Positions 18,178 through 49,309 of a stretch of DNA of 64,000 bases are shown piece by piece. The translations under genes were made by a program, and so were the position numbers. The stretch's first letter is position 1. Every line of letters starts with the position of its first letter. The stretch is from Macrostomum lignano (Eukaryota), in contig NIVC01001757.1 in assembly GCA_002269645.1 (NCBI GenBank), forward strand, positions 1 through 64,000. The letters run 5' to 3'. The notes beneath the pieces are model-generated. The model had not been told where the DNA came from. It saw nothing but the letters and a program-made list of their open reading frames with translations, and searched no databases.

Positions 18178-18464
18178 ATGATCCACAGTGAGCTTTTGTT
18201 CTATCTGTCAATGACAATGATTGTATCTGGTATCGTAGCATTCTTCGTTTTGCTCTTTGTTCCTTCACCCTATGGCCGCAATGCTAATTCGGCGTTTGGA
18301 CCACCAGTTCCAGCCAAAATTGCTTGGCTAATTCAAGAAATTCCTGCCTTCTTAATTCCTGTATATTTTATAATTGAACTATTGTTTTTTAAGACAAGTG
18401 ACTCATCAAATGTCAGGGACGCAGTTCTCTTGCTTGCTCCTTTTATTCTGCACTACTTTCAAAG
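18178..18464 (+). CDS. SRD5A1: Steroid 5-alpha-reductase (SRD5A1/2 family) exon 1
   Basis: PYGR...AWLIQEIPAF...HYFQR motifs; donor AG|GTAGGC. The five exons sum to 765 nt (254 aa plus stop). Confidence 0.92.
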
Positions 18465-18562
18465 GTAGGCCTTAATATCAACTGGTAATACACTGATTTG
18501 TCTAGAGAGAAAATGTATGTGCAATAATTTTTTTAACTTATGTGTTGTACTATGAATTACAG

Positions 18563-18708
18563 GTCCTTGATATATCCCATGCTGATCAGAGGAGGCAAGC
18601 CAATGCCAGCAGTGCCATTTCTATTGGCATTTATTTTCTGCATCTATAATGGCTACCTGCAGTCATCATACATAATCAATTATGGTTATTTTCATTGGGA
18701 TTTCATAT
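18563..18708 (+). CDS. SRD5A1: Steroid 5-alpha-reductase exon 2
   Basis: TTACAG|G acceptor; RSLIYPMLIRGGKPMP...FCIYNGYLQS; donor T|GTAAGT. Confidence 0.92.
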
Positions 18709-18914
18709 GTAAGTATTACCATTTTATTATGATTTATTATCATGATTTATTGTAGAATATATGCAAATATGGCTTGTATATTTTTTAATGTTATAAAGTT
18801 TTTTCAATTGTGTTTGATAGCTGGAGTTTAGCTAGCTATATTATTTTATATATGCTTTTTATAGGATTTAAAAACGTTTTATAGGTGTTTTTTGCTTTTT
18901 TATTGGTGTGCTGC

Positions 18915-21900
18915 TTAAGGTTTAGGTGTGTTGCTTAGGGTTCAGGTGTGTTGCTTAGGGTTCAGGTGTGTTGCTTAGGGTTCAGGTGTGTTGCTTAGGG
19001 TTCAGGTGTGTTGCTTAGGGTTCAGGTGTGTTGCTTAGGGTTCCGGTGTGTTGCTTAGGGTTCAGGTGTGTTGCTTAGGGTTCAGGTGTGTTGCTTAGGG
19101 TTCAGGTGTGTTGCTTAGGGTTCAGGTGTGTTGCTTAGGGTTCAGGTGTGTTGCTTAGGGTTCAGGTGTGTTGCTTAGGGTTCAGGTGTGTTGCTTAGGG
19201 TTCAGGTGTGTTGCTTAGGGTTCAGGTATGTTGCTTAGGGTTCAGGTATGTTGCTTAGGGTTCAGGTGTGTTGCTTAGGGTTCAGGTGTGTTGCTTAGGG
19301 TTCAGGTGTGTTGCTTAGGGTTCAGGTGTGTTGCTTAGGGTTCAGGTGTGTTGCTTAAGGTTCAGGTGTGTTGCTTAGGGTTCAGGTATGTTGCTTAGGG
19401 TTCAGGTATGTTGCTTAGGGTTCAGGTGTGTTGCTTAAGGTTCAGGTGTGTTGCTTAGGGTTCAGGTGTGTTGCTTAGGGTTTAGGTGTGTTGCTTAGGG
19501 TTCCGGTGTGTTGCTTAAGGTTCAGGTGTGTTGCTTAGGGTTCAGGTGTGTTGCTTAGGGTTCAGGTGTGTTGCTTAGGGTTCAGGTGTGTTGCTTAGGG
19601 TTCAGGTGTGTTGCTTAGGGTTCCGGTGTGTTGCTTAAGGTTCAGGTGTGTTGCTTAGGGTTCAGGTGTGTTGCTTAGGGTTCAGGTGTGTTGCTTAGGG
19701 TTCAGGTGTGTTGCTTAGGGTTCAGGTGTGTTGCTTAGGGTTCAGGTGTGTTGCTTAGGGTTCAGGTGTGTTGCTTAGGGTTCAGGTGTGTTGCTTAGGG
19801 TTCCGGTGTGTTGCTTAAGGTTCAGGTGTGTTGCTTAGGGTTCAGGTGTGTTGCTTAGGGTTCAGGTGTGTTGCTTAGGGTTCAGGTGTGTTGCTTAGGG
19901 TTCAGGTGTGTTGCTTAGGGTTCCGGTGTGTTGCTTAAGGTTCAGGTGTGTTGCTTAGGGTTCAGGTGTGTTGCTTAGGGTTCAGGTGTGTTGCTTAGGG
20001 TTCCGGTGTGTTGCTTAGGGTTCAGGTGTGTTGCTTAGGGTTCAGGTGTGTTGCTTAGGGTTCAGGTGTGTTGCTTAGGGTTCAGGTGTGCTGCTTAGGG
20101 TTCAGGTGTGTTGCTTAGGGTTCAGGTGTGTTGCTTAGGGTTCAGGTGTGTTGCTTAGGGTTCCGGTGTGTTGCTTAAGGTTCAGGTGTGTTGCTTAGGG
20201 TTCAGGTGTGTTGCTTAGGGTTCAGGTGTGTTGCTTAGGGTTCCGGTGTGTTGCTTAAGGTTCAGGTGTGTTGCTTAGGGTTCAGGTGTGTTGCTTAGGG
20301 TTCAGGTATGTTGCTTAGGGTTCAGGTGTGCTGCTTAGGGTTCAGGTGTGTTGCTTAGGGTTCAGGTGTGTTGCTTAGGGTTCCGGTGTGTTGCTTAGGG
20401 TTCAGGTGTGTTGCTTAGGGTTCAGGTGTGTTGCTTAGGGTTCAGGTGTGTTGCTTAGGGTTCAGGTGTGTTGCTTAGGGTTCAGGTGTGTTGCTTAGGG
20501 TTCAGGTGTGTTGCTTAGGGTTCAGGTGTGTTGCTTAGGGTTCAGGTGTGTTGCTTAGGGTTCAGGTGTGTTGCTTAGGGTTCAGGTGTGTTGCTTAGGG
20601 TTCAGGTGTGTTGCTTAGGGTTCCGGTGTGTTGCTTAAGGTTCAGGTGTGTTGCTTAGGGTTCAGGTGTGTTGCTTAGGGTTCAGGTGTGTTGCTTAGGG
20701 TTCAGGTGTGTTGCTTAGGGTTCAGGTATGTTGCTTAGGGTTCAGGTGTGTTGCTTAGGGTTCAGGTGTGTTGCTTAGGGTTCAGGTGTGTTGCTTAGGG
20801 TTCAGGTGTGTTGCTTAGGGTTCAGGTGTGTTGCTTAGGGTTCAGGTGTGTTGCTTAGGGTTCAGGTGTGTTGCTTAGGGTTCAGGTGTGTTGCTTAGGG
20901 TTCCGGTGTGTTGCTTAAGGTTCAGGTGTGTTGCTTAGGGTTCAGGTGTGTTGCTTAGGGTTCAGGTGTGTTGCTTAGGGTTCAGGTGTGTTGCTTAGGG
21001 TTCAGGTGTGTTGCTTAGGGTTCCGGTGTGTTGCTTAAGGTTCAGGTGTGTTGCTTAGGGTTCAGGTGTGTTGCTTAGGGTTCAGGTGTGTTGCTTAGGG
21101 TTCCGGTGTGTTGCTTAAGGTTCAGGTGTGTTGCTTAGGGTTCAGGTGTGTTGCTTAGGGTTCAGGTGTGTTGCTTAGGGTTCAGGTGTGCTGCTTAGGG
21201 TTCAGGTGTGTTGCTTAGGGTTCAGGTGTGTTGCTTAAGGTTCAGGTGTGTTGCTTAGGGTTCCGGTGTGTTGCTTAAGGTTCAGGTGTGTTGCTTAGGG
21301 TTCAGGTGTGTTGCTTAGGGTTCAGGTGTGTTGCTTAGGGTTCCGGTGTGTTGCTTAGGGTTCAGGTGTGCTGCTTAGGGTTCAGGTGTGTTGCTTAGGG
21401 TTCAGGTGTGTTGCTTAGGGTTCCGGTGTGTTGCTTAAGGTTCAGGTGTGTTGCTTAGGGTTCAGGTGTGTTGCTTAGGGTTCAGGTGTGTTGCTTAGGG
21501 TTCAGGTGTGTTGCTTAGGGTTCAGGTATGTTGCTTAGGGTTCAGGTGTGTTGCTTAGGGTTCAGGTGTGTTGCTTAGGGTTCAGGTGTGTTGCTTAGGG
21601 TTCCGGTGTGTTGCTTAAGGTTCAGGTGTGTTGCTTAGGGTTCAGGTGTGTTGCTTAGGGTTCAGGTGTGTTGCTTAGGGTTCAGGTGTGTTGCTTAGGG
21701 TTCAGGTATGTTGCTTAGGGTTCAGGTGTGTTGCTTAGGGTTCAGGTGTGTTGCTTAGGGTTCAGGTATGTTGCTTAGGGTTCAGGTGTGTTGCTTAGGG
21801 TTCAGGTGTGTTGCTTAGGGTTCAGGTGTGTTGCTTAGGGTTCAGGTGTGCTGCTTAGGGTTCAGGTGTGTTGCTTAGGGTTCAGGTGTGTTGCTTAGGG

Positions 21901-23206
21901 TTCCGGTGTGTTGCTTAGGGTTCAGGTGTGTTGCTTAGGGTTCAGGTGTGTTGCTTAGGGTTCAGGTGTGTTGCTTAGGGTTCAGGTGTGTTGCTTAGGG
22001 TTCAGGTGTGTTGCTTAGGGTTCAGGTGTGTTGCTTAGGGTTCAGGTGTGTTGCTTAGGGTTCCGGTGTGTTGCTTAAGGTTCAGGTGTGTTGCTTAGGG
22101 TTCAGGTGTGTTGCTTAGGGTTCAGGTGTGCTTAGGGTTCAGGTGTGTTGCTTAGGGTTCAGGTGTGTTGCTTAGGGTTCAGGTGTGTTGCTTAGGGTTC
22201 CGGTGTGTTGCTTAAGGTTCAGGTGTGTTGCTTAGGGTTCAGGTGTGTTGCTTAGGGTTCAGGTGTGTTGCTTAGGGTTCCGGTGTGTTGCTTAGGGTTC
22301 AGGTGTGTTGCTTAGGGTTCAGGTGTGTTGCTTAGGGTTCAGGTATGTTGCTTAGGGTTCAGGTGTGCTGCTTAGGGTTCAGGTGTGTTGCTTAGGGTTC
22401 AGGTGTGTTGCTTAGGGTTCAGGTGTGTTGCTTAGGGTTCAGGTGTGCTGCTTAGGGTTCAGGTGTGTTGCTTAGGGTTCAGGTGTGTTGCTTAGGGTTC
22501 AGGTGTGTTGCTTAGGGTTCCGGTGTGTTGCTTAGGTTCAGGTGTGTTGCTTAGGGTTCAGGTGTGTTGCTTAGGGTTCAGGTGTGTTGCTTAGGGTTCC
22601 GGTGTGTTGCTTAAGGTTCAGGTGTGTTGCTTAGGGTTCAGGTGTGTTGCTTAGGGTTCAGGTGTGTTGCTTAGGGTTCAGGTGTGCTGCTTAGGGTTCA
22701 GGTGTGTTGCTTAGGGTTCAGGTGTGTTGCTTAGGGTTCAGGTGTGTTGCTTAGGGTTCAGGTGTGTTGCTTAGGGTTCAGGTGTGTTGCTTAGGGTTCA
22801 GGTGTGTTGCTTAGGGTTCAGGTGTGTTGCTTAGGGTTCAGGTGTGTTGCTTAGGGTTCAGGTGTGTTGCTTAGGGTTCAGGTGTGTTGCTTAGGGTTCA
22901 GGTGTGTTGCTTAGGGTTCAGGTGTGTTGCTTAGGGTTCAGGTGTGTTGCTTAGGGTTCAGGTGTGTTGCTTAGGGTTCAGGTATGTTGCTTAGGGTTCA
23001 GGTGTGTTGCTTAGGGTTCAGGTATGTTGCTTAGGGTTCAGGTATGTTGCTTAGGGTTCAGGTATGTTGCTTAGGGTTCAGGTATGTTGCTTAGGGTTCA
23101 GGTGTGTTGCTTAGGGTTCAGGTATGTTAGGGTTCAGGTGTAGGGTTCAGGTATGTTGCTTAGGGTTCAGGTATGTTGCTTAGGGTTCAGGTATGTTGCT
23201 TAGGGT
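18915..23206. repeat. 20-bp satellite (TTAGGGTTCAGGTGTGTTGC), about 4.3 kb, filling SRD5A intron 2
   Basis: More than 200 highly homogeneous tandem units. Confidence 0.98.
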
Positions 23207-23330
23207 TAATTTGTGTACTGTTTATCAAGAATAAAATAGAGATTCAACAATAATATATATTGTTCAATGAATTTAAGGTTTATATTTTATTATAATTTTG
23301 ATTTCTCTCAAATTTCTTTTGCCTACACAG

Positions 23331-23441
23331 CTGCAGCTGGCTATGCCCTCTTCGCAGCCGGTATGGCTGGCAATATCCATTCTGATCAGATTTTGCGTTC
23401 ACTTCGGAAACCTGGCGAGACAGGTTACAAAATCCCTCATG
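23331..23441 (+). CDS. SRD5A1: Steroid 5-alpha-reductase exon 3
   Basis: GMAGNIHSDQILRSLRKPGETGYKIPHG; ACACAG| acceptor and |GTAAGA donor, phases consistent. Confidence 0.93.
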
Positions 23442-23520
23442 GTAAGATTCTGATTGCAATTTATTTTGTGCCCCAGTATAAAGTCTAGAATTTTAGACAT
23501 TTTCATTTTATTCATTAAAG

Positions 23521-23671
23521 GCGGACTGTTCAGTCTCGTGTCTGGGGCGAATTTCCTTGCCGAAATTGTCGAATGGACTGGATTTGCTCTGTTGAACCAC
23601 AGCCTGCCTGCTGTGGCCTTCGCCCTGTTCACCGCCGCCAACACTGCACCGCGGGCCTGGCATCATCACCT
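23521..23671 (+). CDS. SRD5A1: Steroid 5-alpha-reductase exon 4
   Basis: GGLFSLVSGANFLAEIVEWTGFAL...RAWHHH; donor |GTGAGT. Confidence 0.93.
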
Positions 23672-23684
23672 GTGAGTGGCTGGG

Positions 23685-24245
23685 GCTGGCGTCTGTCCTG
23701 CTGTGTGTGTTGGTGTCTGCCCTGGTGTCTGTCCTGCTGTGTGTGTTGGTGTCTGCCCTGGCGTCTGTCCTGCTGTGTGTGTTGGTGTCTGCCCTGGCGT
23801 CTGTCCTGCTGTGTGTGTTGGTGTCTGCCCTGGTGTCTGTCCTGCTGTGTGTGTTGGTGTCTGCCCTGGTGTCTGTCCTGCTGTGTGTGTTGGTGTCTGC
23901 CCTGGCGTCTGTCCTGCTGTGTGTGTTGGTGTCTGCCCTGGCGTCTGTCCTGCTGTGTGTGTTGGTGTCTGCCCTCGTGTCTGTCCTGCTGTGTGTGTTG
24001 GTGTCTGCCCTGGTGTCTGTCCTGCTGTGTGTGTTGGTGTCTGCCCTGGCGTCTGTCCTGCTGTGTGTGTTGGTGTCTGCCCTGGTGTCTGTCCTGCTGT
24101 GTGTGTTGGTGTCTGCCCTGGTGTCTGTCCTGCTGTGTGTGTTGGTGTCTGCCCTGGTGTCTGTCCTGGTGTGCGTGTTGGTGTCTGCCCTGGTGTCTGT
24201 CCTGCTGTGTGTGTTGGTGTCTGCCCTGGTGTCTGTCCTGGTGTC
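23685..24245. repeat. 36-bp minisatellite in SRD5A intron 4
   Basis: CTGGTGTCTGTCCTGCTGTGTGTGTTGGTGTCTGCC tandem units. Confidence 0.95.
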
Positions 24246-24321
24246 TCAGTCTGTCTGTCTTACTGTTTGTCTTAGTGTGTCTGTCTGTCTGTGTCTGTCT
24301 GTCTGTTTGTCTGCCTTAGTG

Positions 24322-24371
<50 letters not shown>

Positions 24372-24415
24372 CCTTAGTGTGTCTGTCTGTCTGTGTCTGT
24401 TTGTCTGCCTTAGTG

Positions 24416-24460
<45 letters not shown>

Positions 24461-24491
24461 GCCTGTCTGTTTGTCTGTGCGTGTCTCTGTA

Positions 24492-24525
<34 letters not shown>

Positions 24526-24595
24526 CCTTAGTGTGTCTGTCTGTTTGTCTGCCTTAGTGTGTCTGTCTGTCTGTGTCTGTTTGTCTGCCTTAGTG

Positions 24596-24660
<65 letters not shown>

Positions 24661-24691
24661 GCCTGTCTGTTTGTCTGTGCGTGTCTCTGTA

Positions 24692-24729
<38 letters not shown>

Positions 24730-24773
24730 CCTTAGTGTGTCTGTCTGTCTGTGTCTGTTTGTCTGCCTTAGTG

Positions 24774-24830
<57 letters not shown>

Positions 24831-24861
24831 GCCTGTCTGTTTGTCTGTGCGTGTCTCTGTA

Positions 24862-24895
<34 letters not shown>

Positions 24896-24985
24896 CCTTA
24901 GTGTGTCTGTCTGTTTGTCTGCCTTAGTGTGTCTGTCTGTTTGTCTGCCTTAGTGTGTCTGTCTGTCTGTTTGTCTGCCTTAGTG

Positions 24986-25022
<37 letters not shown>

Positions 25023-25193
25023 GCCTTAGTGTGTCTGTCTGTCTGTCGGTCTGTCTGTTTGTCTGCCTTAGTGTGTCTGTCTGTCGGTCTGTCTGTTTGT
25101 CTGCCTTAGTGTGTCTGTCTGTCTGTCTGTCTGTCTGTGTCTGTTTGTCTGCCTTAGTGTGTCTGTCTGTCTGTCTGTCTGTCTGCCTTAGTG

Positions 25194-25234
<41 letters not shown>

Positions 25235-25319
25235 GCCTTAGTGTGTCTGTCTGTCTGTCTGTCTGTCTGTCTTTCTGTCTGCCTTAGTGTGTCTGTCTGT
25301 CTGTCTGTCTGCCTTAGTG

Positions 25320-25352
<33 letters not shown>

Positions 25353-25687
25353 GCCTTAGTGTGTCTGTCTGTCTGTCGGTCTGTCTGTTTGTCTGCCTTA
25401 GTGTGTCTGTCTGTCTGTCTGTCTGTCGGTCTGTCTGTTTGTCTGCCTTAGTGTGTCTGTCTGTCTGTCTGTCTGTCTGTGTCTGTTTGTCTGCCTTAGT
25501 GTGTCTGTCTGTCTGTCAGTCTGTCTGTCTGTCTGTCTGCCTTAGTGTGTCTGTCTGTCTGTCTGTCTGCCTTAGTGTGTCTGTCTGTCTGTCGGTCTGT
25601 CTGTCTGTCTGTCTGCCTTAGTGTGTCTGTCTGTCTGTCTGTCTGCCTTAGTGTGTCTGTCTGTCTGTCTGTCTGTCTGCCTTAGTG

Positions 25688-25782
<95 letters not shown>

Positions 25783-25791
25783 GTCTGTCTG
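24246..25791. repeat. Compound (TCTG)n microsatellite punctuated by CCTTAGTGTG, SRD5A intron 4
   Basis: Visible directly. Confidence 0.96.
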
Positions 25792-25829
25792 TATTCCAAT
25801 CATTAACCAGCCGCCACCCCCTCCCGCAG

Positions 25830-25899
25830 GTGGTACCTGAAGAAGTTCGGTGACGAGTACCCCAAGAATCGCAAGGCAATTCTCCCCTACCTGATCTGA
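25830..25899 (+). CDS. SRD5A1: Steroid 5-alpha-reductase exon 5 (last)
   Basis: CCCGCAG| acceptor; WYLKKFGDEYPKNRKAILPYLI followed by TGA. Confidence 0.93.
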
Positions 25900-26779
25900 T
25901 GCAGTGCGGGAAGAACTGATGGGTTCATTGTAGGCTCAGATTAACTTATAGGTTTTTAAATTCTTCATTCATAAGTGTCTGATAGTCAATTAGGATTTTG
26001 AAAGATTTTTTTTCTGGTGCTAGTTTTTTTGGTTTCAGTTTCAATTGCCATATTTTTCATATTATTATTCATGCTTAATTTTATTTAAGCCTATTTAATA
26101 AAACAAAAAAATTTGCCGTACTAATTTAAGTAGTTGAACTTAAATACTGCAATACCTAAAATATAATATACTAATTTTGTTGATATGATATTTAAAAAAT
26201 ATATATTTATATAAAATTGTCACAACACAGAAAAACCTGACAAAAAAGATTGAATTTATGTTTTCCGTTGTTGGTTAATCAATAAAGGAAAATATTTTAA
26301 CATTTCTACTGTTGCTATGAACTAAGTGGTGTAGTTAGGTAATCTAGATAAAATATGATTATCTTGTAAACTTTGTTGAGAGGTAAATCTAAATTGGATA
26401 CACAGGTCTTGTTAATACGAGCGTAACTTTGATTCTAAAAAAATATTATAGAATATATGGAAATTATCTATATGCTACTAACAATAATGGCTAGTTACTA
26501 ATACAAAGCAATAAAACGATTTCACATGCAAAATTGTTTCTTTGTTAATATCATTACCTGGGTTTCAGCTTGTTTGTTTATGATATGGGAAGTTCAGCGA
26601 AGTGTTGACGAGCCATCCATACGCTTCTTTTCTCAGCCCTGGACTATCAGCTGCTCTTGTAAAGAGAAGATAAGAATGCTTCTTTGCTGTCAACTGCACC
26701 TTTCTTCTCTTGCTTAGGTCGCAGCTATACATGTCGAGCCAATGCCATTATTTAAGTATTCTTGATTGTCTCGACTTGT

Positions 26780-27562: not shown

Positions 27563-27940
27563 TCATTTCTGCTGCTGTTGTTGCCGATAAAATTCGGACA
27601 GCACCGCCCAGGCGTCCGGCGCCATAAACCCGTCCGGAGGGTCTCGGCCGTCTCTGGCCAGGGCGCGCATTTTTGTGCCCGATATGAATTCGAACTCGTC
27701 GCGTCTTGACGGCTCGAAAAATGCCATCCGGCCGATCGAACGGTTGTAGGCGGCCACTCGGAATGGCACGATTTCGAGTTTGTCAAGACCAGGGGTCATG
27801 CCCAGCACCAGGGCCCCGTGCTGCGGGTTGTACAGGTCCGACTTCTCCGGGCTGTCCGGGTCGGGTAGGCCGGCCGGGTCGCGTCCGACAATGTAGAAAT
27901 TGGCGCCGGCGTTCATCCGAGCCTTGGCGTGCCACTGCAC
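27563..27940 (-). CDS. PAPSS1: Bifunctional PAPS synthase, last coding exon (ATP sulfurylase C-terminus)
   Basis: [24 protein letters not shown]...VAAYN...[14 protein letters not shown]...PDGFMAP; TGA at 27565-27563. Confidence 0.95.
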
Positions 27941-28009
27941 CTGCGGGTTGGGGAGGCGATTGGGACTCGCCTGTAGCAACTGGTTCTGCTGGGAATTTCT
28001 TAGGGACTT

Positions 28010-28215
28010 CTGCTGTGGGCAGGACAGCCTCCCAGATCCTCAGTTGCTGGGCCAGCCTCCCAGATCCTCAGTTACTGGGCCAGCCTCCCAGATTCTCAGT
28101 TACTGGGCCAGCCTCCCAGATCCTCAGTTACTGGGCCAGCCTCCCAGATCCTCAGTTGCTGGGCCAGCCTCCCAGATCCTCAGTTGCTGGGCCAGCCTCC
28201 CAGATCCCCAGTTGC
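28010..28215. repeat. 28-bp minisatellite in a PAPSS intron
   Basis: GGGCCAGCCTCCCAGATCCTCAGTTGCT units. Confidence 0.92.
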
Positions 28216-28226
28216 CGTGCCGGTAC

Positions 28227-28572
28227 CTCTGTGGGCCCAGCGTACAGCATCGGTGCCGGAAACACCGCGGTGACGGTGCTGCCGGGGTCCAGCACGCCAG
28301 CCTTCAGCACAGCCTCATGCTGGCGCAGCCGGACAGGCAGCGGCACATCGTCCGGTTTTGTCCAGCCTCCCAGCGGGTGCAGCAGCAGCACCGGGTTGCG
28401 GTAGCGCCGCTCCTCCAGCAGGCGCCGCCTGGTATCGGCCATCAGCAGGGCGTGCCCGTTGTGCACCGGGTTGCGCAGCTGGAAGGCGAAAACCGCGTCG
28501 GCGTTCATCTCGGCAAATCTGGCGCGTAACTGGCGCGGAGTCAGTCGGTAGTGATCCAGGCCGTCGTGCCAC
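28227..28572 (-). CDS. PAPSS1: PAPS synthase coding exon 4 (ATP sulfurylase active site)
   Basis: [18 protein letters not shown]...[17 protein letters not shown]...MLYAGPTE; AG/GT boundaries and phases consistent. Confidence 0.95.
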
Positions 28573-28789
28573 CTGCGGATGAGTTTATGATGCATGCACC
28601 GAATAGCACAGATTAAAAATGTCAAGCACTAATAAATCATGAGGGCAGTTTGATTATAGTTTCTCTTATGCAATTCTAAAAGTACACGAGCACTATTAAA
28701 GTATGCATGCACTTTGAAATTGATCGTGCACTAATCAAGTATGCGTGCACTAATAAAGTGCGCGTACACTAATAACGCACTAAATAACT

Positions 28790-28964
<175 letters not shown>

Positions 28965-29353
28965 TTTATGTGCTCCAGAAGTTTCAACTCTCCGCCAATG
29001 AGCCAGTCGCCGCTAGCGAGAATTCGAGCAACGCTCGGGTGTCCGGATGACACGGTGCCGAAGGTTCGAGCGCAGCGCTCGCGTTTCTGATGGGCGAACA
29101 CCTCGACGGAGTGGAGCAGCCCAATGACCTGACTGTCGCCGCTGCCGTCGCCAACCTGACGACGCAAAGCGACGCTGGACTGGCCAACGCATGCCTCGCG
29201 TTCTGCGTCGTTGATAGCCAAGACGATTGGCACGCTCTGACTGTGCCAGCCCGTGCTGCCTCGGGCTTGCACCGCGCCGAAGTGCAGGCACTGCAGGTAC
29301 TGCCGCTCGGTCATGAAGCCGGTCAGCGGGTGCGCCCAGCCTTCGGAGAGCAC
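28965..29353 (-). CDS. PAPSS1: PAPS synthase coding exon 3
   Basis: VLSEGWAHPLTGFMTERQYLQCLHFG...SVPIVLAI...HQKRERCARTFGT...GDWLIGGEL. Confidence 0.94.
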
Positions 29354-29361
29354 CTGAGGAA

Positions 29362-29835
29362 GAGGATTCTCTGGCAATCTTTGGGATTCTCTGACAATCT
29401 TTGGGATTCTCTGGCAATCTTTGGGATTTTCTGGCAGTCTTTGGGATTCTCTGGCAATCTTTGGGATTCTTTGGCAATCTTTGGGATTCTCTGGCAATCT
29501 TTGAGATTCTTTGGCAATCTTTGAGATTCTTTGGCAATCTTTGAGATTCTTTGGCAATCTTTGAGATTCTTTGGCAATCTTTGGGATTCTTTGGCAATCT
29601 TTGGGATTCTCTGGCAATCTTTGGGATTCTTGGGGAATATTTGGGATTCTTGGGGAGTATTTGGGATTCTTGGGGAGTATTTGGGATTCTTGGGGGGTAT
29701 TTGAGATTTTTGAGAAATCTTTGGGATTACTTTGGGAATCTTTGGGATTCTTGGGGAATCTTTGGGATACTTGGGGAATCTTTAGGATTCTTGAGGAATC
29801 TTTTGGATACTTGGGAAATCTTTGGGATTCTTGTG
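29362..29835. repeat. 20-bp minisatellite (TTGGGATTCTCTGGCAATCT) in a PAPSS intron
   Basis: Visible directly. Confidence 0.92.
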
Positions 29836-29875
29836 GATTACTGAGGCCTTTTAAAGAAAATTACAAAAGGCCAAC

Positions 29876-30241
29876 CTGCGCCCACTGCAGGTCGATCTCG
29901 TCCACTTTCAGGCTCGGAAGTCCCTCAGCCTCCTGCAGCATCGCCTGACGTTCAGCGGCATCAGCCGCCACCAGTTCGCAAATTTCTCCCTCAACTGCCC
30001 CGGAAGCCCCGCCGGCCACCCCAGCAGGCAGAAGGCCTTCCCGATCCAGAAGGTCAACAACGGCCAGGACACTCTGACGGACTCCGCAAGCTGCCGTCTG
30101 GACGGTGAGGTCCGGTCGCATCGGTGGCTCATAGGCGCTGTCAATGCCTGTAAAGCCCTTGATGAGGCCTTCGCGGGCCTTGCGGTAGAGGCCCTTCACA
30201 TCGCGAGTCTCGCACACCTCCAGCGGCGCGTCTACAAAAAT
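29876..30241 (-). CDS. PAPSS1: PAPS synthase coding exon 2 (APS kinase C-terminus and linker)
   Basis: [40 protein letters not shown]...IDLQWAQ. Confidence 0.95.
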
Positions 30242-30628
30242 CTGCGAGGGAATTTTTAAATTTAAAATTGGCTCCCAGTTTGACATCAAAACACATAAGA
30301 AAAAGTAAAACAAAGACTATTAGAAAGTCAAATGGCCGCTGTACACTGTGGGAGAGTTCGTTTAAGTGCTTGCCTGCGTACAGGTATTTGCGCAGTTGCA
30401 TGGCCAGGAGACGATAATGTCTCCGAAGTCGTTGCAACAGGTAACATCATCTGAAATCCAAGCCTCTGACTCAGAATATTTTTGAAATTTTTTCTAAGAA
30501 ATCAGATTTGAACTAGCGCGAAACCTGTGTACTAGCGTTTAGTTTTGAATGAATCTGTTTAAATATTTCTCTCGTAAAAAACGTAGAAAATCCGGAATTT
30601 TCCAGGAAACCAGTTTACGTTAACAAAC

Positions 30629-31021
30629 CTCGTAGAATTTCAAACCGGCCTCCTCGTGCAGCCGCCGTGCCTTGTCGCGGTCCTGCCTGAACGGGCTGAT
30701 GAACGCCGTGATGCAGACGATGCCGCCGTCAGCGAAGAGCTTCGCCACCTCGCTAATCCGTCGAATGTTCTCCTCGCGGTCGGCCTGGGAGAACCCGAGA
30801 TTTTTGTTTAAACCCGTGCGAATATTGTCGCCGTCGAGCGAGTAGGCCGGCACCCCGGCTGACACCAGATACTCCTCAAGGCCGAACGCGATAGTGGTCT
30901 TGCCCGCACCGGAGAACCCCGTCAGCCAGACGGTGCAGCCGCGGAAACCCCCGCCGCCAGTGACTTTGGCTCGGCGATCCCGGCTGACATAATGCTCCTG
31001 CTGAAACACGTTGCTGGCCAT
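30629..31021 (-). CDS. PAPSS1: PAPS synthase coding exon 1 (APS kinase N-terminus)
   Basis: [14 protein letters not shown]...[16 protein letters not shown] (P-loop)...[10 protein letters not shown]. Acceptor at 31048, with a probable non-coding upstream exon (donor GTAAGT at 32079-32074). Total CDS 1872 nt = 623 aa. Confidence 0.9.
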
Positions 31022-32511: not shown

Positions 32512-32514
<3 letters not shown>

Positions 32515-32570: not shown

Positions 32571-32577
<7 letters not shown>

Positions 32578-41610: not shown

Positions 41611-41768
41611 GGCCTACATATTTGTGCGAATAGCCAGTGGCCTGTATCAAGTGCGACGCAATAATTGTTATAACATCAATTAAAACATTTTCCAGGTCCA
41701 GCAGGCCTCAAAGCCAGGATACAGTGGTATCACACTATTTAGATTATGTAAGTCAGGCCGTAATTCTA

Positions 41769-42577
41769 TCAGATCTCCATAGCCGAGTAGTAAGCCAAGC
41801 TTCTAGCAAAGCTATCCTCTGGCGAGTACACTGGCGCGTACTTTAGCCGCGACCGAATCTTACCGGCGTCGTAATAACATGTGGTACAGGCCAGGTACAA
41901 TTCGTTTTTAGTAAAAGCTAATGGAACGCGAACTATAGGCGAAATGGCCATCGCTAGCAGCTCCAGCAGCCACCAGAAGACAAAGACCAGCACTAGAGGC
42001 ACGGACACACCAAGCAGGCGGACACCGTGAGCTCGTAGAAACGGTCGGACAAACTGAAAATTCGAATTCAATGGAGTATCGTCCGTGACCAGATAGGCCT
42101 GACCGCTAATCTGCTGGCGCATTGACGGGTCCAGCAGGCAGCGCATTGCGCACACGTGCGCCCAAGCCACGTTGCCAACGTAGACCCGTTGAATCTGGGC
42201 GTCCGGACTGCCCAGATGCGGCATCAGGCCGAAGAAACGCTTCCCGGCTCGAATAAACGTTGGTATAAATTTCAGATCGCCTTCGCCGTAGATGCCAACG
42301 GGTCGGATTATTAAAGTGCACAATGGCCGGCTGTTGTTGTTGTCGCCGCCGATACTGGAACAATTGGCGTCTAGTACGGAGCGTTCGGCTAAACGTTTGC
42401 TAGTGGCGTAGCCATTTAACAGGTCCACCTCGCCTTTGCCGCTACCTTCGGTGGCGTCGATGTCGGCCTCGGTGAAGCCCTCGACAGGTTTGTAGCAGCG
42501 GCCGAGCTCCGATGTGCTGGTGAAGATTAGATTTGGCACACGACACTCGCGGCAGGCGTCTATGACGTTCTGCGTGC
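41769..42577 (-). CDS. HSD3B: 3-beta-hydroxysteroid dehydrogenase/isomerase-family SDR, exon 3 (last)
   Basis: GTQNVIDACRECRVPNLIFTST, catalytic YATSK, IRPVGIYGEGD, VYVGNVAWAH, GQAYLVTDDTP; TTACAG| acceptor. The three exons sum to 1155 nt (384 aa). Confidence 0.9.
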
Positions 42578-43846
42578 CTGTAAGGGGGGTTGAGTGCGCA
42601 GGCTAGAAACTTCCTCGATTTCTATTGGCTGGCAAGCGAGTGACCCAAACCCCCTCACTCCAAACCGTAGGCTTTGAAGACTTCCTCAATGCTCATTGGC
42701 TGACATTAGTTATGTACGTTGAGGCCCCCACCCCACTCCTTGCACGAGGCCTCTACCAAACCACCTCACTCCAAGCCCAAGCACTAAAGAGATCTGACTT
42801 CCGCGGGAAATACTATACGATTTTCATTTTTAACTCACCCCACGTTCCACCGACATTGACTAATCAAAGGTTTGCTTATTTCTTTACCTGAATTCTTCAA
42901 GTACAATTGGTTTGTAATGATGGCAAATTTTTTTAGCTATACTTGATTTATTTGGTTTATAGCAAAACTGAAATCGTATTTTTTCCTTCTCCCCTGTGGG
43001 GGGGGCGCAGATTGCTAGTCTAATTTACTAAATAGAAACCGATCTCTGACGCAAGTTCTAATGCATTGTACGCATTAAAATCTACCCCCAACAATGCTTA
43101 GTAGCATATAGTCGCTAATCATTTTTTTATTTTTTTATTTTGTGTACTGCATGGTTAAAAAACTTGCGGTCGGGAGCGGTAGAGGACAGACGTCAGGGGA
43201 GGAGAGCAGTGAGGCAGTGATAGTAGCTACGAGCAAAATTAGAAAAAGTAAAGCAGCTGTCATCTACTAGGGGAGGGGGGATCTATTACAGATGCGGGTT
43301 CGATCTGGTCCTGTTTTAGAGAGAACGAGAGCGAGAGCAAGTCCCACTGCACTTAATTGTGCGTCCACTCCATGTGGCGTCCAGAGAGAAAGAATGTTAA
43401 ACAGGGAGAGGTTTCTATTGAAGGCGTTGAGTAGGGGATACGCATCGATATCCTTATTTATTGATTTCGCTATCAGGCTACTCACATAGAAAACTGGAGG
43501 CGGAGGGTGGGGACTTTGAGATATTTCCGAATGAATTCAACAATAGATCTAAGATACTGTCTGTAGTGCCGAATATGTCTCCGTTGCTGAATGCACTAGC
43601 GCTAAAATACTCTGCAGCTAAATTCTAATGTAACAGTTTTACATAGCTCCACTCAGCTGTACTCAACTCAACTCTACTCTACCCTACCCAACTTAGTACA
43701 TACTCTACTCTCTAACCTACCATAATCTAACCTAATCTACCCTACCCTACATCCCCTACTCTACTCTATTCTAAACCTTCTCTCTCTCTCTCTTCTAATT
43801 CAGGTCAAAGACCAAGTCCAATTCAATGCTCTGATGACAAGCTCAC

Positions 43847-44005
43847 CCAAAATGTTAACGTCATTCATTCGGACCACATCCGGGTAGAGTCCCAACTCTA
43901 TCAGAGCGGCAGTGTGAATAACGCAGTCGACATTGCGAAAGGCCGGCACCAGTTGTGCCTTGTCAGTGACGTCAGCCGATACAAATCGAAGTGCGGTGGA
44001 ACCGT
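43847..44005 (-). CDS. HSD3B: 3-beta-HSD-family exon 2
   Basis: FVSADVTDKAQLVPAFRNVDCVIHTAALIELG...VNILG; TTGCAG| acceptor and |GTGAGC donor, phase 1/1. Confidence 0.88.
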
Positions 44006-44094
44006 CTGCAAACGTTTTTATGCGTAGCGTTTTAATCAGCTGTCGTTTACTAAACAATTGTAGTGGTGTTTAATTAAAAATGCCGGTTTTACAA

Positions 44095-44866
44095 GGGCAG
44101 TTAGCCCTTTTTAGACGCCTTTTACACACCTGTTAGATACCATTAGATACCTGTTAGATACCATTTAGACACCTCTTAGACACCTGTTAAATGCCGTTTA
44201 GACAAACCTGTTAAAAACCGGTAGGACACCTATTTTTTACCTGTTAGACGCCTGTTAAAAACACGTGCTGGGCATCAGCTAAAACATCTGTTAGGAAACC
44301 TGTTGAACATCATGTTAGACGCCTGTTAGACGCTTGTAATACACCTGCCAGAAACATTTTAGATATCTATTAGGAGCTTGTTAGATACCTGTTAGACAAT
44401 TATTAGATAACTGTTAGACACCTATTAAATAACTTTATTAGACTCGGATTATACACTTGCTAGACATTGATTAGATACCTGTTAGACACCTATTAGATAC
44501 CTGTTAGACACTTATTAGACACCTGTTAGATACCTGTTAGACACTTATTAGACACCTGTTAGACACCTGTTAGACACGTGTTAGACACCTGTCAGAGACT
44601 TGTTAGACACCTGTTAGAGACCTATTAGATAACTGTTTTAGACTCGGATTAGACACTTGTTAGACATTGATTAGATACCTGTTAGACACCTATTAGATAC
44701 CTGTTAGACACCTATTAGATACCTGTTAGACACATGTTAGACACCTGTTAGAAACCTGTTAGACACGTGTTAACACCTGTCAGACACCTGTTAGACACGT
44801 GTTAGACACCTGTTAGACACGTGTTAGACACGTGTCAGACACCTGTTAGACACCTGTTAGACACCG
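44095..44866. repeat. 11-bp degenerate repeat (ACACCTGTTAG) in 3-beta-HSD intron 1
   Basis: Visible directly. Confidence 0.88.
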
Positions 44867-44887
44867 GTCCTAATTAATCACACTAAC

Positions 44888-45074
44888 CGGTACCATCCAG
44901 ACAGAAGCCAGCGGGCAGGGGCCGAATATCCAGTGCAATAATAACAGCCACCTCCGAGCAGCTCGCCAGTTGTTTAATCAGCTTCTTTCCTAGAAAACCG
45001 CTGCCGCCGGTCACCAGAACTGTAGCCCGTGGCTGAACCGCAGACCGCCTATTGCTGCTACTAGCACTAATCAT
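44888..45074 (-). CDS. HSD3B: 3-beta-HSD-family exon 1 (Rossmann fold)
   Basis: VLVTGGSGFLG motif. Donor GTTAGT after 44888; an alternative in-phase donor lies after 44894. Confidence 0.85.
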
Positions 45075-46987: not shown

Positions 46988-47566
46988 GCGAAGCCACCAA
47001 ATTCAGCGCAAGAGATACAACAGTTGCACGTTCTTTAACGACCTCCAGATCATTTCTAAGAAAGCTAATTCATCCGCAATTATTTTTTCTACTTCGAAGT
47101 TGCTAGAACTCTACTATTAGTAGACTGATCGGATTTTATTCGAAAAATAAGACAAAATTTACAGATTTAATTGTCTTTTATAAGTCCTGTCCTGTCCACC
47201 GTGGAGTTGCGGGCTTGAGGTGCGGCGTTATTTTAAAACTTCTCTTAAGCGTATCTTATTAGCCTCTATCCATAGCTACAATTATACTCTGGCTCATATT
47301 TAGACCGAATATGAGAATTTACACCATACAAGCTGCGGGAAAGCAGAGAGCTTTTGTTGTGCGGTTTTTGCGTTTCGCGCATTTCGTTTGACAGCTAACT
47401 TTAATTTATCTGAGCCTCCAAAGCTGCCTGCTGGATGAAAGCCAATTAAAGAGAGGCTGACAGAGAACACACGAGGGTGGTATCACACCTACTTTTAAAC
47501 TGTAGACTATGATTGTGCTCCGCTCAGATCTGAAAGCTAAAATCTTATCTTCTATAATTCTAAGAA

Positions 47567-47799
47567 ATGAAATTCATGCGTTTTCGCAAACGATTGATCT
47601 TAGCCGCTGTCTGCTTGGTTGTAACTTTAATCTGCTGTCTGCGAACAGGTCTCAGGCGCTATGCCTATTATGGAGAGCACTTCAAATGTCAGCCAGTGAT
47701 GACGTCATCATTGCGGAGACCTTGGCGAAGCTGGCCAAGGATTCGGCCAGCTGATCCGTGGATTTTGCCGCCGTTGGTGCCACCGAGTCAGCTGACTTG
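47567..47799 (+). pseudogene. GT31 beta-1,3-glycosyltransferase (B3GALT/B3GNT-like) exon 1, type II membrane anchor
   Basis: MKFMRFRKR basic tail plus hydrophobic LILAAVCLVVTLICCL; donor TG|GTGCGT, phase 2, fits exon 2. Confidence 0.65.
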
Positions 47800-47859
47800 G
47801 TGCGTTCTTTGTTGGCTTAAATTTATTGTTTTTGACACTGAGAGTGACAGCAGTCTGTG

Positions 47860-48812
47860 ACAGTCTAGATATGGAAGAAGTGACAGAATTGTCTAACACA
47901 GATTAAAGAGAGTGACAGTTCTGTAGCACACAGATTCACGGGAGTGACACAGTTCTGTAGCACACAGATTCATGGGAGTGACACAGTTCTGTAGCACACA
48001 GATTCGAGAGAGTGACAGTTCTGTAGCACACAGATTCAAGAGAGTGACACAGTTCTGTAGCACACAGTTTCAAGAGAGTGACACAGTTCTGTAGCACACA
48101 GATTCAAGAGAGTGACACAGTTCTGTAACACACAGATTCACGGGAGTGACACAGTTCTGTAGCACACAGATTCAGAAGAGTGACACAGTTCTGTAGCACA
48201 CAGATTCAAGAGAGTGACACAGTTCTGTAGCACACAGATTCAAGAGAGTGACACAGTTCTGTAGCACACAGATTCAAGAGAGTGACACAGTTCTGTAGCA
48301 CACAGATTCAAGAGAGTGACACAGTTCTGTAGCACACAGATTCAGAAGAGTGACACAGTTCTGTAGCACACAGATTCAAGAGAGTCACAAAGTTCTGTAG
48401 CTCACAGATTCACCCTCACGGAAGTGACACAGTTCTGTAGCACACAGATTCACGGGAGTGACACAGTTCTGTAGCTCACAGATTCACGGGAGTGACACAG
48501 TTCTGTAGCACACAGATTCACAGGAGTGACACAGTTCTGTAGCACACTGCAGATTCACAGGAGTGACACAGTTCTGTAGCACACAGATTCACAGGAGTGA
48601 CACAGTTCTGTAGCACACAGATTCAAGAGAGTGACACAGTTCTGTAGCACACAGATTTACCCTCACGGAAGTGACACAGTTCTGTAACACACAGATTCAC
48701 GGGAGTGACATAGTTCTGTAGCACACAGATTCACAGGAGTGACACAGTTCTGTAGCACACAGATTCACGGGAGTGACACAGTTCTGTAGCACACAGATTC
48801 ACGGGAGTGACA
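47860..48812. repeat. About 34-bp minisatellite in GT31 intron 1
   Basis: GTGACACAGTTCTGTAGCACACAGATTCAAGAGA units. Confidence 0.94.
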
Positions 48813-48861
48813 TTTCTGTAACACCAAAAAGCAAGTCATTAACACCACCGATTTCCAGCAG

Positions 48862-49309
48862 GTCCCAGCTAAAAGTTCGCAGAGGTTCCAGTCGGCATCA
48901 ATTAGTCCTCCAAGACTTATACACAGCCCAGTTCCCGGTTCCAGCTGTGCCACTGAGCACGGCAACTCCTTCAGACTCCATCGCTATCAGCCTAGTGATC
49001 ATAGTGAAATCTGCAATAGGCAACTTTGCCTCTAGAAGAGCGATTCGAACAACATGGGGCAATCCGCAGTTTTGGCCTGAAGGCACCCTATTGAGGTTCA
49101 CTGTCGGATCGCCAGATAAGGCCGAAGTCATGACGCAGCTGCTCGAATGCGATTCGAACAACATGGGGCAATCCGCAGTTTTGGCCTGAAGGCACCCTAT
49201 TGAGGTTCACTGTCGGATCGCCAGATAAGGCCGAAGTCATGACGCAGCTGCTGGAGGAGTGTCGGCAGTTTGGCGATGTCATCGTTCACGGTGGAGGCGA
49301 CGGGTACAG
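48862..49309 (+). pseudogene. GT31 exon 2, frameshifted by a 109-bp tandem duplication
   Basis: LVIIVKSAIGNFASRRAIRTTWG and LLEECRQFGDVIV...GY motifs. The duplication gives a premature TGA at 49187-49189; removing 109 nt restores a 339-nt phase 2/2 exon. Confidence 0.8.

What the first reader, a model, noticed from the sequence alone, without database searches (positions are those of the whole stretch)
18178..49309. Candidate metazoan steroid-modification gene cluster: SRD5A + PAPSS + 3-beta-HSD (+ GT31)
Seen: four consecutive recognisable genes, three intact, with SRD5A and HSD3B within 27 kb and PAPSS between them. Established: 3-beta-HSD/isomerases convert delta5-3-beta-hydroxysteroids to delta4-3-ketosteroids, the substrate of SRD5A-type 5-alpha-reductases; PAPSS makes the PAPS donor needed for steroid (and glycan) sulfation; these genes are unlinked in human. 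Inference: the adjacency may reflect a co-regulated pathway making 5-alpha-reduced, sulfated and perhaps glycosylated steroids (pheromone, defence or stanol metabolism) in an invertebrate. Caveats: no sulfotransferase in the window; GT31 enzymes usually act on Golgi glycans; this GT31 copy is disrupted.
Basis: partly seen in the sequence, partly recalled or inferred. Interest (0 to 1): 0.7.

Follow-up and report, generated by a model that had tools for sequence, protein, structure and literature searches.

The report
Flatworm steroid-enzyme genes sitting side by side
In the flatworm Macrostomum lignano the genes for two consecutive steroid-modifying enzymes (3-beta-HSD and 5-alpha-reductase) really do lie 27 kb apart with the cell's general sulfate-donor gene between them, but every test I could run suggests a lineage-specific coincidence of ordinary single-copy genes rather than a co-regulated gene cluster.

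Summary
The window is Macrostomum lignano contig NIVC01001757.1, positions 1-64000. It carries an intact SRD5A1-type 5-alpha-reductase (5 exons), an intact bifunctional PAPS synthase (5 exons), an intact HSD3B/HSD3B7-family 3-beta-HSD (3 exons) and a B3GALT-like GT31 gene. The GT31 gene is broken here by a perfect 109-bp exon duplication. Its intron also holds a 13-kb LTR retrotransposon, and the gene runs off the window.

The "cluster" interpretation is not supported by what could be tested:
- The same gene order occurs on two other contigs, but these are 97-99% identical homeologous copies of a neopolyploid genome, so they are not independent evidence.
- Nine loci from eight other animals show no linkage within 10 kb. 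These are an annelid, an oyster, a hemichordate, a sea urchin, a sea cucumber, amphioxus, a coral and one unidentified eukaryote.
- Owenia has HSD3B and PAPSS on different chromosomes.
- PAPSS is the only PAPSS family found in this species, so it is probably the housekeeping gene.
- GT31 resembles Golgi B3GALT5 and carries lesions in two of three copies.
- No two of the three enzyme genes share a promoter, and I found no shared 5' motifs.

The two steroid enzymes probably act one after the other on sterols whether or not they are linked. Expression data and congeneric genomes could not be reached, so a two-gene co-regulated module remains possible (about 0.2).

The parts
18178..25899 (+). SRD5A1-type steroid 5-alpha-reductase gene. 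5 exons: 18178-18464, 18563-18708, 23331-23441, 23521-23671, 25830-25899. 254 aa, intact.
   Evidence: Pfam PF02544 6.6e-49. Exact match to PAA64375.1, Mlig017916g3. 50-54% identity to vertebrate and invertebrate SRD5A1. 2.5e-55 to the human SRD5A2 structure 7BW1, with the QE, HYFxR, NIHSD, RKPGE, GANFxxEIxEW and HHH motifs kept.
27563..31021 (-). Bifunctional PAPS synthase gene (APS kinase + PUA + ATP sulfurylase). 5 exons: 31021-30629, 30241-29876, 29353-28965, 28572-28227, 27940-27563. 623 aa, intact.
   Evidence: Pfam. About 60% identity to PAPSS across Metazoa, and only one M. lignano cluster found. Collinear with Owenia PAPSS. The UniRef model A0A1I8JBK0 is 94% identical but has a 29-aa gap.
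41769..45074 (-). HSD3B/HSD3B7-family 3-beta-hydroxysteroid dehydrogenase gene. 3 exons: 45074-44888, 44005-43847, 42577-41769. 384 aa, intact. GGSGFLG at residue 23, YATSK at residue 172.
   Evidence: Pfam PF01073 6.6e-60. 100% identical to PAA83023.1. Nearest homologue is Owenia at 43% identity. NJ tree gives Mlig+Owenia 100% bootstrap, inside the animal HSD3B/HSD3B7 family. NSDHL scores only 59 bits.
47567..64000 (+). B3GALT-like GT31 glycosyltransferase gene, disrupted in this copy. Exon 1 starts at 47567 (its donor site is uncertain). Exon 2 is about 48859-49309. Exon 3 starts at 63848, contains the DDD motif and continues beyond the window.
   Evidence: Galactosyl_T profile positions 2-60 in exon 2. 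Exon 3 is 100% identical to the homeolog over 26 aa, and the frame is open through DDDLLMNPF. The intact homeologous copy scores Galactosyl_T 3.5e-28, and its nearest solved structure is B3GALT5.
49040..49252 (+). Perfect 109-bp tandem duplication inside GT31 exon 2. It shifts the frame and causes a premature stop.
   Evidence: TRF reports period 109, 2.0 copies, 100% match. The duplication is absent from both homeologous loci, where exon 2 reads through.
50001..63098 (-). Ty3/gypsy LTR retrotransposon inserted in the 27-bp minisatellite of GT31 intron 2. Not part of the enzyme set.
   Evidence: RVT_1, RNase H and integrase domains in the ORF 54058-57609. The 2.0-kb LTRs are 99.5% identical, with flanking ATTC on both sides. 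The homeolog has an uninterrupted minisatellite at this position.
18905..23207 (.). 20-bp minisatellite (216 copies) filling SRD5A intron 2. It is the largest of the arrays that make up 55% of the locus.
   Evidence: TRF. Repeat fraction. The homeologous SRD5A gene spans 2.9 kb against 7.7 kb here.

Best explanation
The locus holds ordinary, single-family M. lignano orthologues of four enzymes: SRD5A1 (steroid 5-alpha-reductase), PAPSS (PAPS synthase), an HSD3B/HSD3B7-family 3-beta-HSD/isomerase, and a B3GALT-like Golgi glycosyltransferase. They became neighbours in the flatworm lineage. The juxtaposition is most likely neutral, not a selected or co-regulated cluster.

Shown: the genes are real, three are intact with catalytic motifs kept, and the order recurs in the homeologous copies.

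Inferred: 3-beta-HSD oxidises and isomerises delta5-3-beta-hydroxysterols (dietary or endogenous) to delta4-3-ketosteroids, and SRD5A then reduces these to 5-alpha-3-ketosteroids using NADPH, as the orthologues do elsewhere. This two-step sequence would run whether or not the genes are linked. PAPSS supplies PAPS for all sulfation in the animal. GT31 acts on glycans and is decaying in this copy.
For: - Gene identity and integrity.
- The same order occurs on NIVC01000436.1 and NIVC01000173.1. Coding exons are 97-99% identical. [quoted passage not shown] The three copies therefore count as one observation.
- No SRD5A or PAPSS within 10 kb of HSD3B in Owenia, Ptychodera, Diadema or an unidentified eukaryote contig. 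No HSD3B or PAPSS within 10 kb of SRD5A1 in Saccostrea, Branchiostoma, Apostichopus or Desmophyllum.
- Owenia HSD lies on a 39.26-Mb chromosome and Owenia PAPSS on a 38.88-Mb one. Babylonia SRD5A (60.3 Mb) and PAPSS (102.9 Mb) also differ. Five vertebrates have HSD3B or HSD3B7 and SRD5A1 on records of different length.
- Only one PAPSS cluster was found in M. lignano, so it looks housekeeping.
- GT31's nearest structure is B3GALT5. It has lesions in two of three copies and is not called as a gene in the transcript-based annotation.
- Orientation: SRD5A and PAPSS are convergent, 1.7 kb apart. HSD lies 10.7 kb upstream of PAPSS on the same strand. HSD and GT31 are divergent. No two of the three enzyme genes share a promoter.
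- No shared 11-mers across all three 5' regions and no excess of nuclear-receptor half-sites.
- My own rough estimate, an inference: there are about 2,000-3,000 consecutive-enzyme pairs in metabolism, and any given pair has roughly a 4e-4 chance of lying within three genes. That predicts about one such coincidence per genome.
Against: - 3-beta-HSD and 5-alpha-reductase catalyse strictly consecutive reactions, so the pairing is more specific than a generic functional similarity.
- For a pre-specified pair, adjacency within two genes has a chance of only about 1e-4.
- M. lignano transcribes some neighbouring genes as polycistronic precursors: about 7% of assembled transcripts (PMC5730564). HSD3B and PAPSS share a strand.
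- The 10-kb flanks examined in other species are short.
- No close relative (another Macrostomum or another flatworm) could be examined.
- No expression data could be reached.
Confidence: 0.62

Rival explanations
1. Two-gene functional module. HSD3B and SRD5A1 lie in one chromatin or regulatory domain and are co-expressed in the same cells, for example gut or gonad-associated cells. There they convert delta5-sterols to 5-alpha-reduced 3-keto or 3-hydroxy steroids (stanols or a signalling steroid). PAPSS and GT31 are passengers.
For: The enzymes act consecutively (established biochemistry). Both are single-family genes kept intact in all three copies, while the neighbouring GT31 decays. M. lignano retains nuclear-receptor subfamilies that are lost in other flatworms (PMC8363021), so it could plausibly use lipid ligands.
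Against: No linkage in any other animal examined. The two genes are 16-27 kb apart on opposite strands with a housekeeping gene between them. No shared promoter motifs were found. Intactness of both genes is expected anyway for useful single-copy enzymes.
Confidence: 0.2
2. A three- or four-gene metabolic cluster (HSD3B, SRD5A, PAPSS, possibly GT31) dedicated to making sulfated, perhaps glycosylated, 5-alpha-steroids as pheromone or defence compounds.
For: The three activities could form part of such a pathway. By analogy (from my own knowledge), vertebrate 5-alpha bile-alcohol sulfates need HSD3B7, a 5-alpha-reductase and PAPS. HSD3B and PAPSS are co-oriented in a genome that uses polycistronic precursors.
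Against: No sulfotransferase, CYP or UGT lies in the window or in the fetched flanks of the homeologous loci. The flanking genes there are a SPOC-domain protein, a 256-aa unknown and Robl/LC7. PAPSS is the only PAPSS family found, about 60% identical to all animal PAPSS, so it is not a dedicated paralogue. GT31 is B3GALT5-like, damaged in two of three copies and not annotated as expressed.
Confidence: 0.05
3. Relic of an ancient bilaterian microsynteny block that happens to survive in M. lignano.
For: Apostichopus has a GT31 gene 8.5 kb downstream of its SRD5A1-like gene.
Against: HSD3B and PAPSS are absent from the flanks of SRD5A1 in five species, and SRD5A and PAPSS are absent from the flanks of HSD3B in four. 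Owenia has HSD and PAPSS on different chromosomes. GT31 is a large family, so a single co-occurrence carries little weight, and the sea-cucumber GT31 fragment gave no tblastn match to the flatworm protein.
Confidence: 0.03

Closest known systems
Vertebrate SRD5A1/SRD5A2 (steroid 5-alpha-reductases; human SRD5A2 structure 7BW1)
   Same: Same Pfam family. 50-54% identity to SRD5A1. Aligned over the full length to SRD5A2 at 2.5e-55, with the Q-E (53-54), HYFxR (Y93), NIHSD, RKPGE, GANFxxEIxEW and HHH motifs conserved. Five-exon structure with boundaries at the same residues as in amphioxus and sea cucumber.
   Different: The substrate in a flatworm is unknown. Molluscan homologues appear not to serve vertebrate-type androgen signalling (abstract of PMC6848481). 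No enzymatic data exist.
Vertebrate HSD3B1/2 and HSD3B7; from my own knowledge also C. elegans HSD-1 of the dafachronic-acid pathway
   Same: PF01073, an N-terminal GxxGxxG motif, a YxxxK catalytic pair and a hydrophobic C-terminal segment. About 32-34% identity to both vertebrate paralogue groups. Three-exon structure shared with the Owenia, Ptychodera and unidentified eukaryote loci.
   Different: Not a 1:1 orthologue of either vertebrate paralogue. It groups with Owenia (100% bootstrap), outside the vertebrate HSD3B clade and the HSD3B7+amphioxus clade. Whether it has isomerase activity, and which sterol it uses, is untested.
Metazoan bifunctional PAPSS1/2
   Same: APS kinase + PUA + ATP sulfurylase architecture. 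About 60% identity across the whole length, with the P-loop, HNGH and GRDPAG motifs present.
   Different: Nothing notable. It appears to be the only PAPSS family in the species, which argues for a housekeeping role.
B3GALT5/B3GNT2-type GT31 Golgi glycosyltransferases
   Same: PF01762 across 190 of 195 profile positions in the intact homeolog, a DDD motif and an N-terminal signal-anchor.
   Different: This window's copy is frameshifted by a 109-bp duplication. No link to steroid glycosylation is known for this family.
Animal biosynthetic gene clusters of non-homologous genes (for example the octocoral terpene clusters; from my own knowledge)
   Same: Physically adjacent non-homologous enzyme genes that could act in one pathway.
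   Different: Only two pathway-specific genes are present. Linkage in close relatives and co-expression are both untested here, and no linkage was seen in distant animals. There is no pathway-dedicated paralogue and no product.

Membership tests
SRD5A1/2 steroid 5-alpha-reductase | Steroid_dh (PF02544) domain, and closer to SRD5A1/2 than to SRD5A3 or TECR | tested here: met
   6.6e-49. 191 bits to SRD5A2 against 50 bits to an enoyl-CoA reductase. All named best hits are SRD5A1.
SRD5A1/2 steroid 5-alpha-reductase | Catalytic Glu/Tyr pair (human SRD5A2 E57 and Y91, residue roles from my own knowledge) and NADPH-binding motifs | tested here: met
   The alignment shows QE at 53-54, HYFQR at 92-96, NIHSD at 159, RKPGE at 170, GANFLAEIVEW at 190 and HHH at 229.
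SRD5A1/2 steroid 5-alpha-reductase | NADPH-dependent reduction of delta4-3-ketosteroids | not testable with these tools
   Needs an enzyme assay.
HSD3B/HSD3B7 3-beta-HSD/isomerase | 3Beta_HSD (PF01073) domain with GxxGxxG and YxxxK | tested here: met
   6.6e-60. GGSGFLG at residue 23 and YATSK at residue 172.
HSD3B/HSD3B7 3-beta-HSD/isomerase | Groups with animal HSD3B/HSD3B7 rather than with NSDHL, SDR42E or sugar epimerases | tested here: met
   Named hits are HSD3B or HSD3B7 only, at about 155-160 bits. NSDHL scores 59 bits. The NJ tree places it within the animal clade relative to bacterial relatives. SDR42E sequences were not included in the tree.
HSD3B/HSD3B7 3-beta-HSD/isomerase | Dehydrogenase plus delta5-to-delta4 isomerase activity on a sterol or steroid | not testable with these tools
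   Needs an enzyme assay.
PAPSS | Fused APS kinase and ATP sulfurylase domains, full length | tested here: met
GT31 (B3GALT-like) | Intact Galactosyl_T domain with a DxD motif | tested here: not met
   In this window exon 2 is frameshifted by the 109-bp duplication. The domain is intact only in the NIVC01000173.1 copy.
Metabolic (biosynthetic) gene cluster | Three or more adjacent non-homologous genes dedicated to one pathway | tested here: not met
   Only HSD3B and SRD5A are pathway-specific. PAPSS is the sole, general PAPS synthase found. GT31 is glycan-type and broken. No SULT, CYP or UGT lies in the window or the fetched flanks.
Metabolic (biosynthetic) gene cluster | Linkage conserved in related species | tested here: inconclusive
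   Linkage is absent in eight distant animals within 10-kb flanks, and the genes lie on different chromosomes in Owenia. Congeners and other flatworms could not be reached. The three M. lignano copies are homeologs.
Metabolic (biosynthetic) gene cluster | Co-expression of the member genes | not tested
   Gene identifiers were not found in the searchable literature or in the supplements of four M. lignano expression papers.

The most novel reading that the evidence does not exclude
M. lignano keeps HSD3B and SRD5A1 as a lineage-specific, co-regulated two-gene module, possibly drawing on the adjacent PAPSS. The module would turn dietary delta5-sterols into a 5-alpha-reduced, possibly sulfated, steroid signal or protective stanol. 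That would make it one of very few non-homologous metabolic gene clusters known in animals, in a flatworm where transgenesis and RNAi are available.
Probability: 0.15. Interest if true: 0.65.

Novelty: new member of a known kind. Interest (0 to 1): 0.3.

Why it matters
If the adjacency were functional, it would give a compact and genetically tractable entry point to a long-standing puzzle. Many invertebrates keep 3-beta-HSD and 5-alpha-reductase orthologues while lacking much of vertebrate steroidogenesis, and what those enzymes do there is unknown. It would also add a rare animal example of a metabolic gene cluster.

As the evidence stands, the value is more modest:
- M. lignano has intact, single-family SRD5A1 and HSD3B-family genes with catalytic motifs preserved, which makes them good RNAi and assay targets.
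- The PAPSS gene is missing from the GenBank protein set of this assembly, and its UniRef model lacks 29 residues. A corrected model is given here.
- The locus shows how minisatellite expansion, LTR insertion and small lesions differentiate the homeologous copies of a neopolyploid genome.

Tried and rejected
I reached the contigs through homologue ids instead.
- Expression evidence: a full-text search for the three Mlig gene ids found nothing. Supplement searches of four M. lignano papers (PMC5816591, PMC5946080, PMC12896417, PMC5730564) for the ids and for SRD5A1, HSD3B and PAPSS also found nothing.
- Literature on flatworm steroid enzymes or on this linkage: four searches returned nothing relevant beyond context papers.
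- Shared regulatory motifs: there was no excess of RGGTCA half-sites, SRD5A and the HSD/GT31 spacer shared one 11-mer, and no 11-mer was common to all three 5' regions.
- Non-coding RNAs: no Rfam family and no tRNA in the window.
- Contamination or misassembly as an explanation for the order: rejected, because three separate contigs show the same order.
- GT31 as truncated at 49309: rejected, because exon 3 resumes at 63848 after the retrotransposon.
- Long ORFs inside the minisatellites (for example 12254-17256, 23573-25621, 35965-38320): rejected as repeat translations.
- Horizontal transfer of the SDR from bacteria: considered, because bacterial hits reach about 31% identity. Rejected, because the nearest relatives are animal, the intron positions are shared with animal loci, and the tree places the gene with animals.

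Full report
**Source of the window.** My hand-built 3-beta-HSD model is 100% identical to Macrostomum lignano protein PAA83023.1. The SRD5A model is an exact match to PAA64375.1. That gene lies at 18178-25899 of contig NIVC01001757.1 in assembly GCA_002269645.1, which are exactly the window coordinates. The window is therefore positions 1-64000 of that contig, from a free-living marine flatworm.

**Check of the observation.** Stop-to-stop frames and splice sites give three complete genes with canonical GT-AG introns.
- SRD5A, + strand: 5 exons, 254 aa, Steroid_dh 6.6e-49.
- PAPSS, - strand: 5 exons, 623 aa, with APS_kinase, PUA_2 and ATP-sulfurylase domains.
- 3-beta-HSD, - strand: 3 exons, 384 aa, 3Beta_HSD 6.6e-60 (all Pfam results).
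- A fourth gene, GT31 on the + strand, has a signal-anchor exon at 47567 and a second exon of about 48859-49309 that matches the first 60 positions of Galactosyl_T.

A perfect 109-bp tandem duplication inside GT31 exon 2 shifts the frame. Tandem repeats occupy 55% of the span, and the coding sequence of the three intact genes occupies 12%.

**Corrections to the anatomy.** GT31 does not end at 49309. Its second intron is a 27-bp minisatellite that here contains a 13.1-kb Ty3/gypsy LTR retrotransposon (50001-63098). The element has 2.0-kb LTRs that are 99.5% identical, ATTC on both flanks, and an open 1183-aa pol frame. Exon 3 resumes at 63848 with the DDD motif in frame and leaves the window.

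**Identity of the enzymes.**
- SRD5A is of the SRD5A1/2 type. It is 50-54% identical to SRD5A1 of vertebrates, molluscs, echinoderms, amphioxus and corals. It aligns end to end with the human SRD5A2 structure at 2.5e-55, against 50 bits to an enoyl-CoA reductase. The substrate and NADPH motifs are conserved.
- The SDR belongs to the animal HSD3B/HSD3B7 family. Its named hits are all HSD3B or HSD3B7 at about 32-34% identity. NSDHL scores only 59 bits. In a bootstrapped NJ tree it pairs with the annelid Owenia (100%) and lies inside the animal clade, but outside both the vertebrate HSD3B clade and the HSD3B7+amphioxus clade.
- PAPSS is about 60% identical to PAPSS throughout Metazoa and collinear with Owenia PAPSS. 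Only one M. lignano cluster appeared in the search, so this is probably the animal's general PAPS synthase.
- GT31, read from the intact homeolog, is closest to B3GALT5 and B3GNT2, which are Golgi glycan enzymes.

**Evidence for linkage within the species.** The same order (SRD5A forward, then PAPSS, HSD3B reverse, then GT31 forward) occurs on NIVC01000436.1 and NIVC01000173.1. This is not independent support. Coding exons are 97-99% identical, the species is a neopolyploid, and the assembly contains 180 Mb of duplicated non-repetitive blocks at least 95% identical (PMC5730564; PMC10733133 abstract).

The copies do show how fast the non-coding parts diverge. The SRD5A gene spans 7.7 kb here and 2.9 kb in the homeolog. 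GT31 carries a different state in each copy: the 109-bp duplication here, a 1-bp deletion at the DDD motif in NIVC01000436.1, and no lesion in NIVC01000173.1.

**Linkage in other animals.** I fetched 10 kb on each side of HSD3B-family genes in Owenia, Ptychodera, Diadema and one unidentified eukaryote contig. I did the same for SRD5A1-type genes in Saccostrea, Branchiostoma floridae, Apostichopus and Desmophyllum. I checked both the called genes and tblastn with all four flatworm proteins. No partner gene appeared in any of them.

Record lengths add further evidence. Owenia HSD and PAPSS lie on different chromosomes, as do Babylonia SRD5A and PAPSS. In five vertebrates HSD3B or HSD3B7 and SRD5A1 sit on different records.

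The only echo of the arrangement is a GT31 gene 8.5 kb downstream of the sea-cucumber SRD5A1-like gene. GT31 is a large family, and the part of that gene within the locus gave no match to the flatworm protein.

The flanks examined are short, and no close relative of M. lignano could be reached. The result therefore says 'not ancient and not widespread' rather than 'not selected'.

**Regulatory layout.**
- SRD5A and PAPSS are convergent, with their stop codons 1.7 kb apart.
- HSD3B lies 10.7 kb upstream of PAPSS on the same strand. The interval is almost all minisatellite.
- HSD3B and GT31 are divergent across 2.5 kb.

No two of the three enzyme genes share a promoter. The three 5' regions have no 11-mer in common and no excess of nuclear-receptor half-sites. 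M. lignano does make polycistronic precursors, about 7% of assembled transcripts, so a joint HSD3B-PAPSS transcript cannot be excluded. The 9-11 kb spacing in all three copies makes it unlikely; this is an inference.

**Other genes in reach.** These are a Q/A-rich protein with a C-terminal SPOC domain (765-4842), a 256-aa protein with no known domain (9892-10662), and, beyond GT31 in the homeologs, a Roadblock/LC7 dynein light chain. There is no sulfotransferase, cytochrome P450 or UGT.

**Chance.** For a pre-specified pair, lying within two or three genes of each other has a probability of about 1e-4 to 4e-4. The pair was not pre-specified, however. With a few thousand consecutive-enzyme pairs in metabolism, roughly one such coincidence per genome is expected. 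This is my own rough estimate, not a computed test. The proper test is a gene-order permutation on the annotation, which I could not run.

**Conclusion.** The best-supported reading (0.62) is a neutral, flatworm-lineage juxtaposition of ordinary genes. Two of them probably act consecutively on sterols (delta5-3-beta-ol to delta4-3-one to 5-alpha-3-one), regardless of their linkage. PAPSS is housekeeping and GT31 is a decaying bystander. A co-regulated HSD3B-SRD5A module remains possible (0.2). The full sulfated or glycosylated steroid cluster is unlikely (0.05).

Context from the literature is consistent with real but non-vertebrate roles for these enzymes. M. lignano keeps nuclear-receptor subfamilies that other flatworms have lost (PMC8363021). 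Molluscan 5-alpha-reductase homologues act in development without vertebrate-type androgens (PMC6848481 abstract). No paper in the searchable library mentions this linkage.

Noticed in passing
window 50001-63098 (LTRs 49996-51991 and 61100-63098; pol ORF 54058-57609, - strand): A young Ty3/gypsy LTR retrotransposon with 99.5% identical 2-kb LTRs, ATTC on both flanks and an open 1183-aa RT-RNaseH-integrase frame. It sits inside a 27-bp minisatellite. The homeolog NIVC01000436.1 (L001) has an uninterrupted minisatellite at this position; the third copy was not aligned across this intron.
   Followed up: partly
window 18905-23207, 12485-17066, 35944-38452 and about 20 further arrays: Minisatellites with 11-36-bp units and up to 217 copies fill the introns and spacers, making up 55% of 18178-49309. 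They produce long spurious ORFs on both strands. Array lengths differ strongly between homeologs: the SRD5A gene spans 7.7 kb here and 2.9 kb on NIVC01000173.1.
   Followed up: partly
window 49040-49252; L001 about 4330; L008 2724-6556: The three homeologous GT31 copies are in three different states: a 109-bp exon duplication here, a 1-bp deletion at the DDD motif in NIVC01000436.1, and intact in NIVC01000173.1. This is either early pseudogenisation after polyploidy or long-read assembly error. None of the copies is called as a gene in the fetched loci.
   Followed up: partly
window 27563-31021: The PAPSS gene is intact, yet it is absent from the GenBank protein set of this assembly. My exact sequence is not in the collection, and the only M. 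lignano cluster comes from UniRef. The UniRef model A0A1I8JBK0 skips 29 residues at the end of exon 2 and the start of exon 3.
   Followed up: yes
window 765-4842 (+): A GC-rich (58-60%) stretch of overlapping long ORFs encodes a Ser/Gln/Ala-rich low-complexity protein that ends in a SPOC domain (4.1e-23). The exon structure was not resolved.
   Followed up: partly
window 9892-10662 (+): An annotated single-exon 256-aa hypothetical protein with no Pfam match lies immediately upstream of SRD5A. It is kept as a 255-aa gene at the same position in the homeolog.
   Followed up: no
L010 (Apostichopus japonicus CM075705.1) 10001-16663 and 25195-26663: The sea-cucumber SRD5A1-like gene has a GT31 (Galactosyl_T) gene 8.5 kb downstream. 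This faintly echoes the flatworm arrangement. It is probably chance, given the size of the GT31 family.
   Followed up: no
window exons of the three intact genes: Coding GC content differs markedly between neighbouring genes: SRD5A 45.8%, HSD3B 54.5%, PAPSS 63.5%, against a window mean of 47.2%. This could reflect different expression regimes. It was not analysed further.
   Followed up: no
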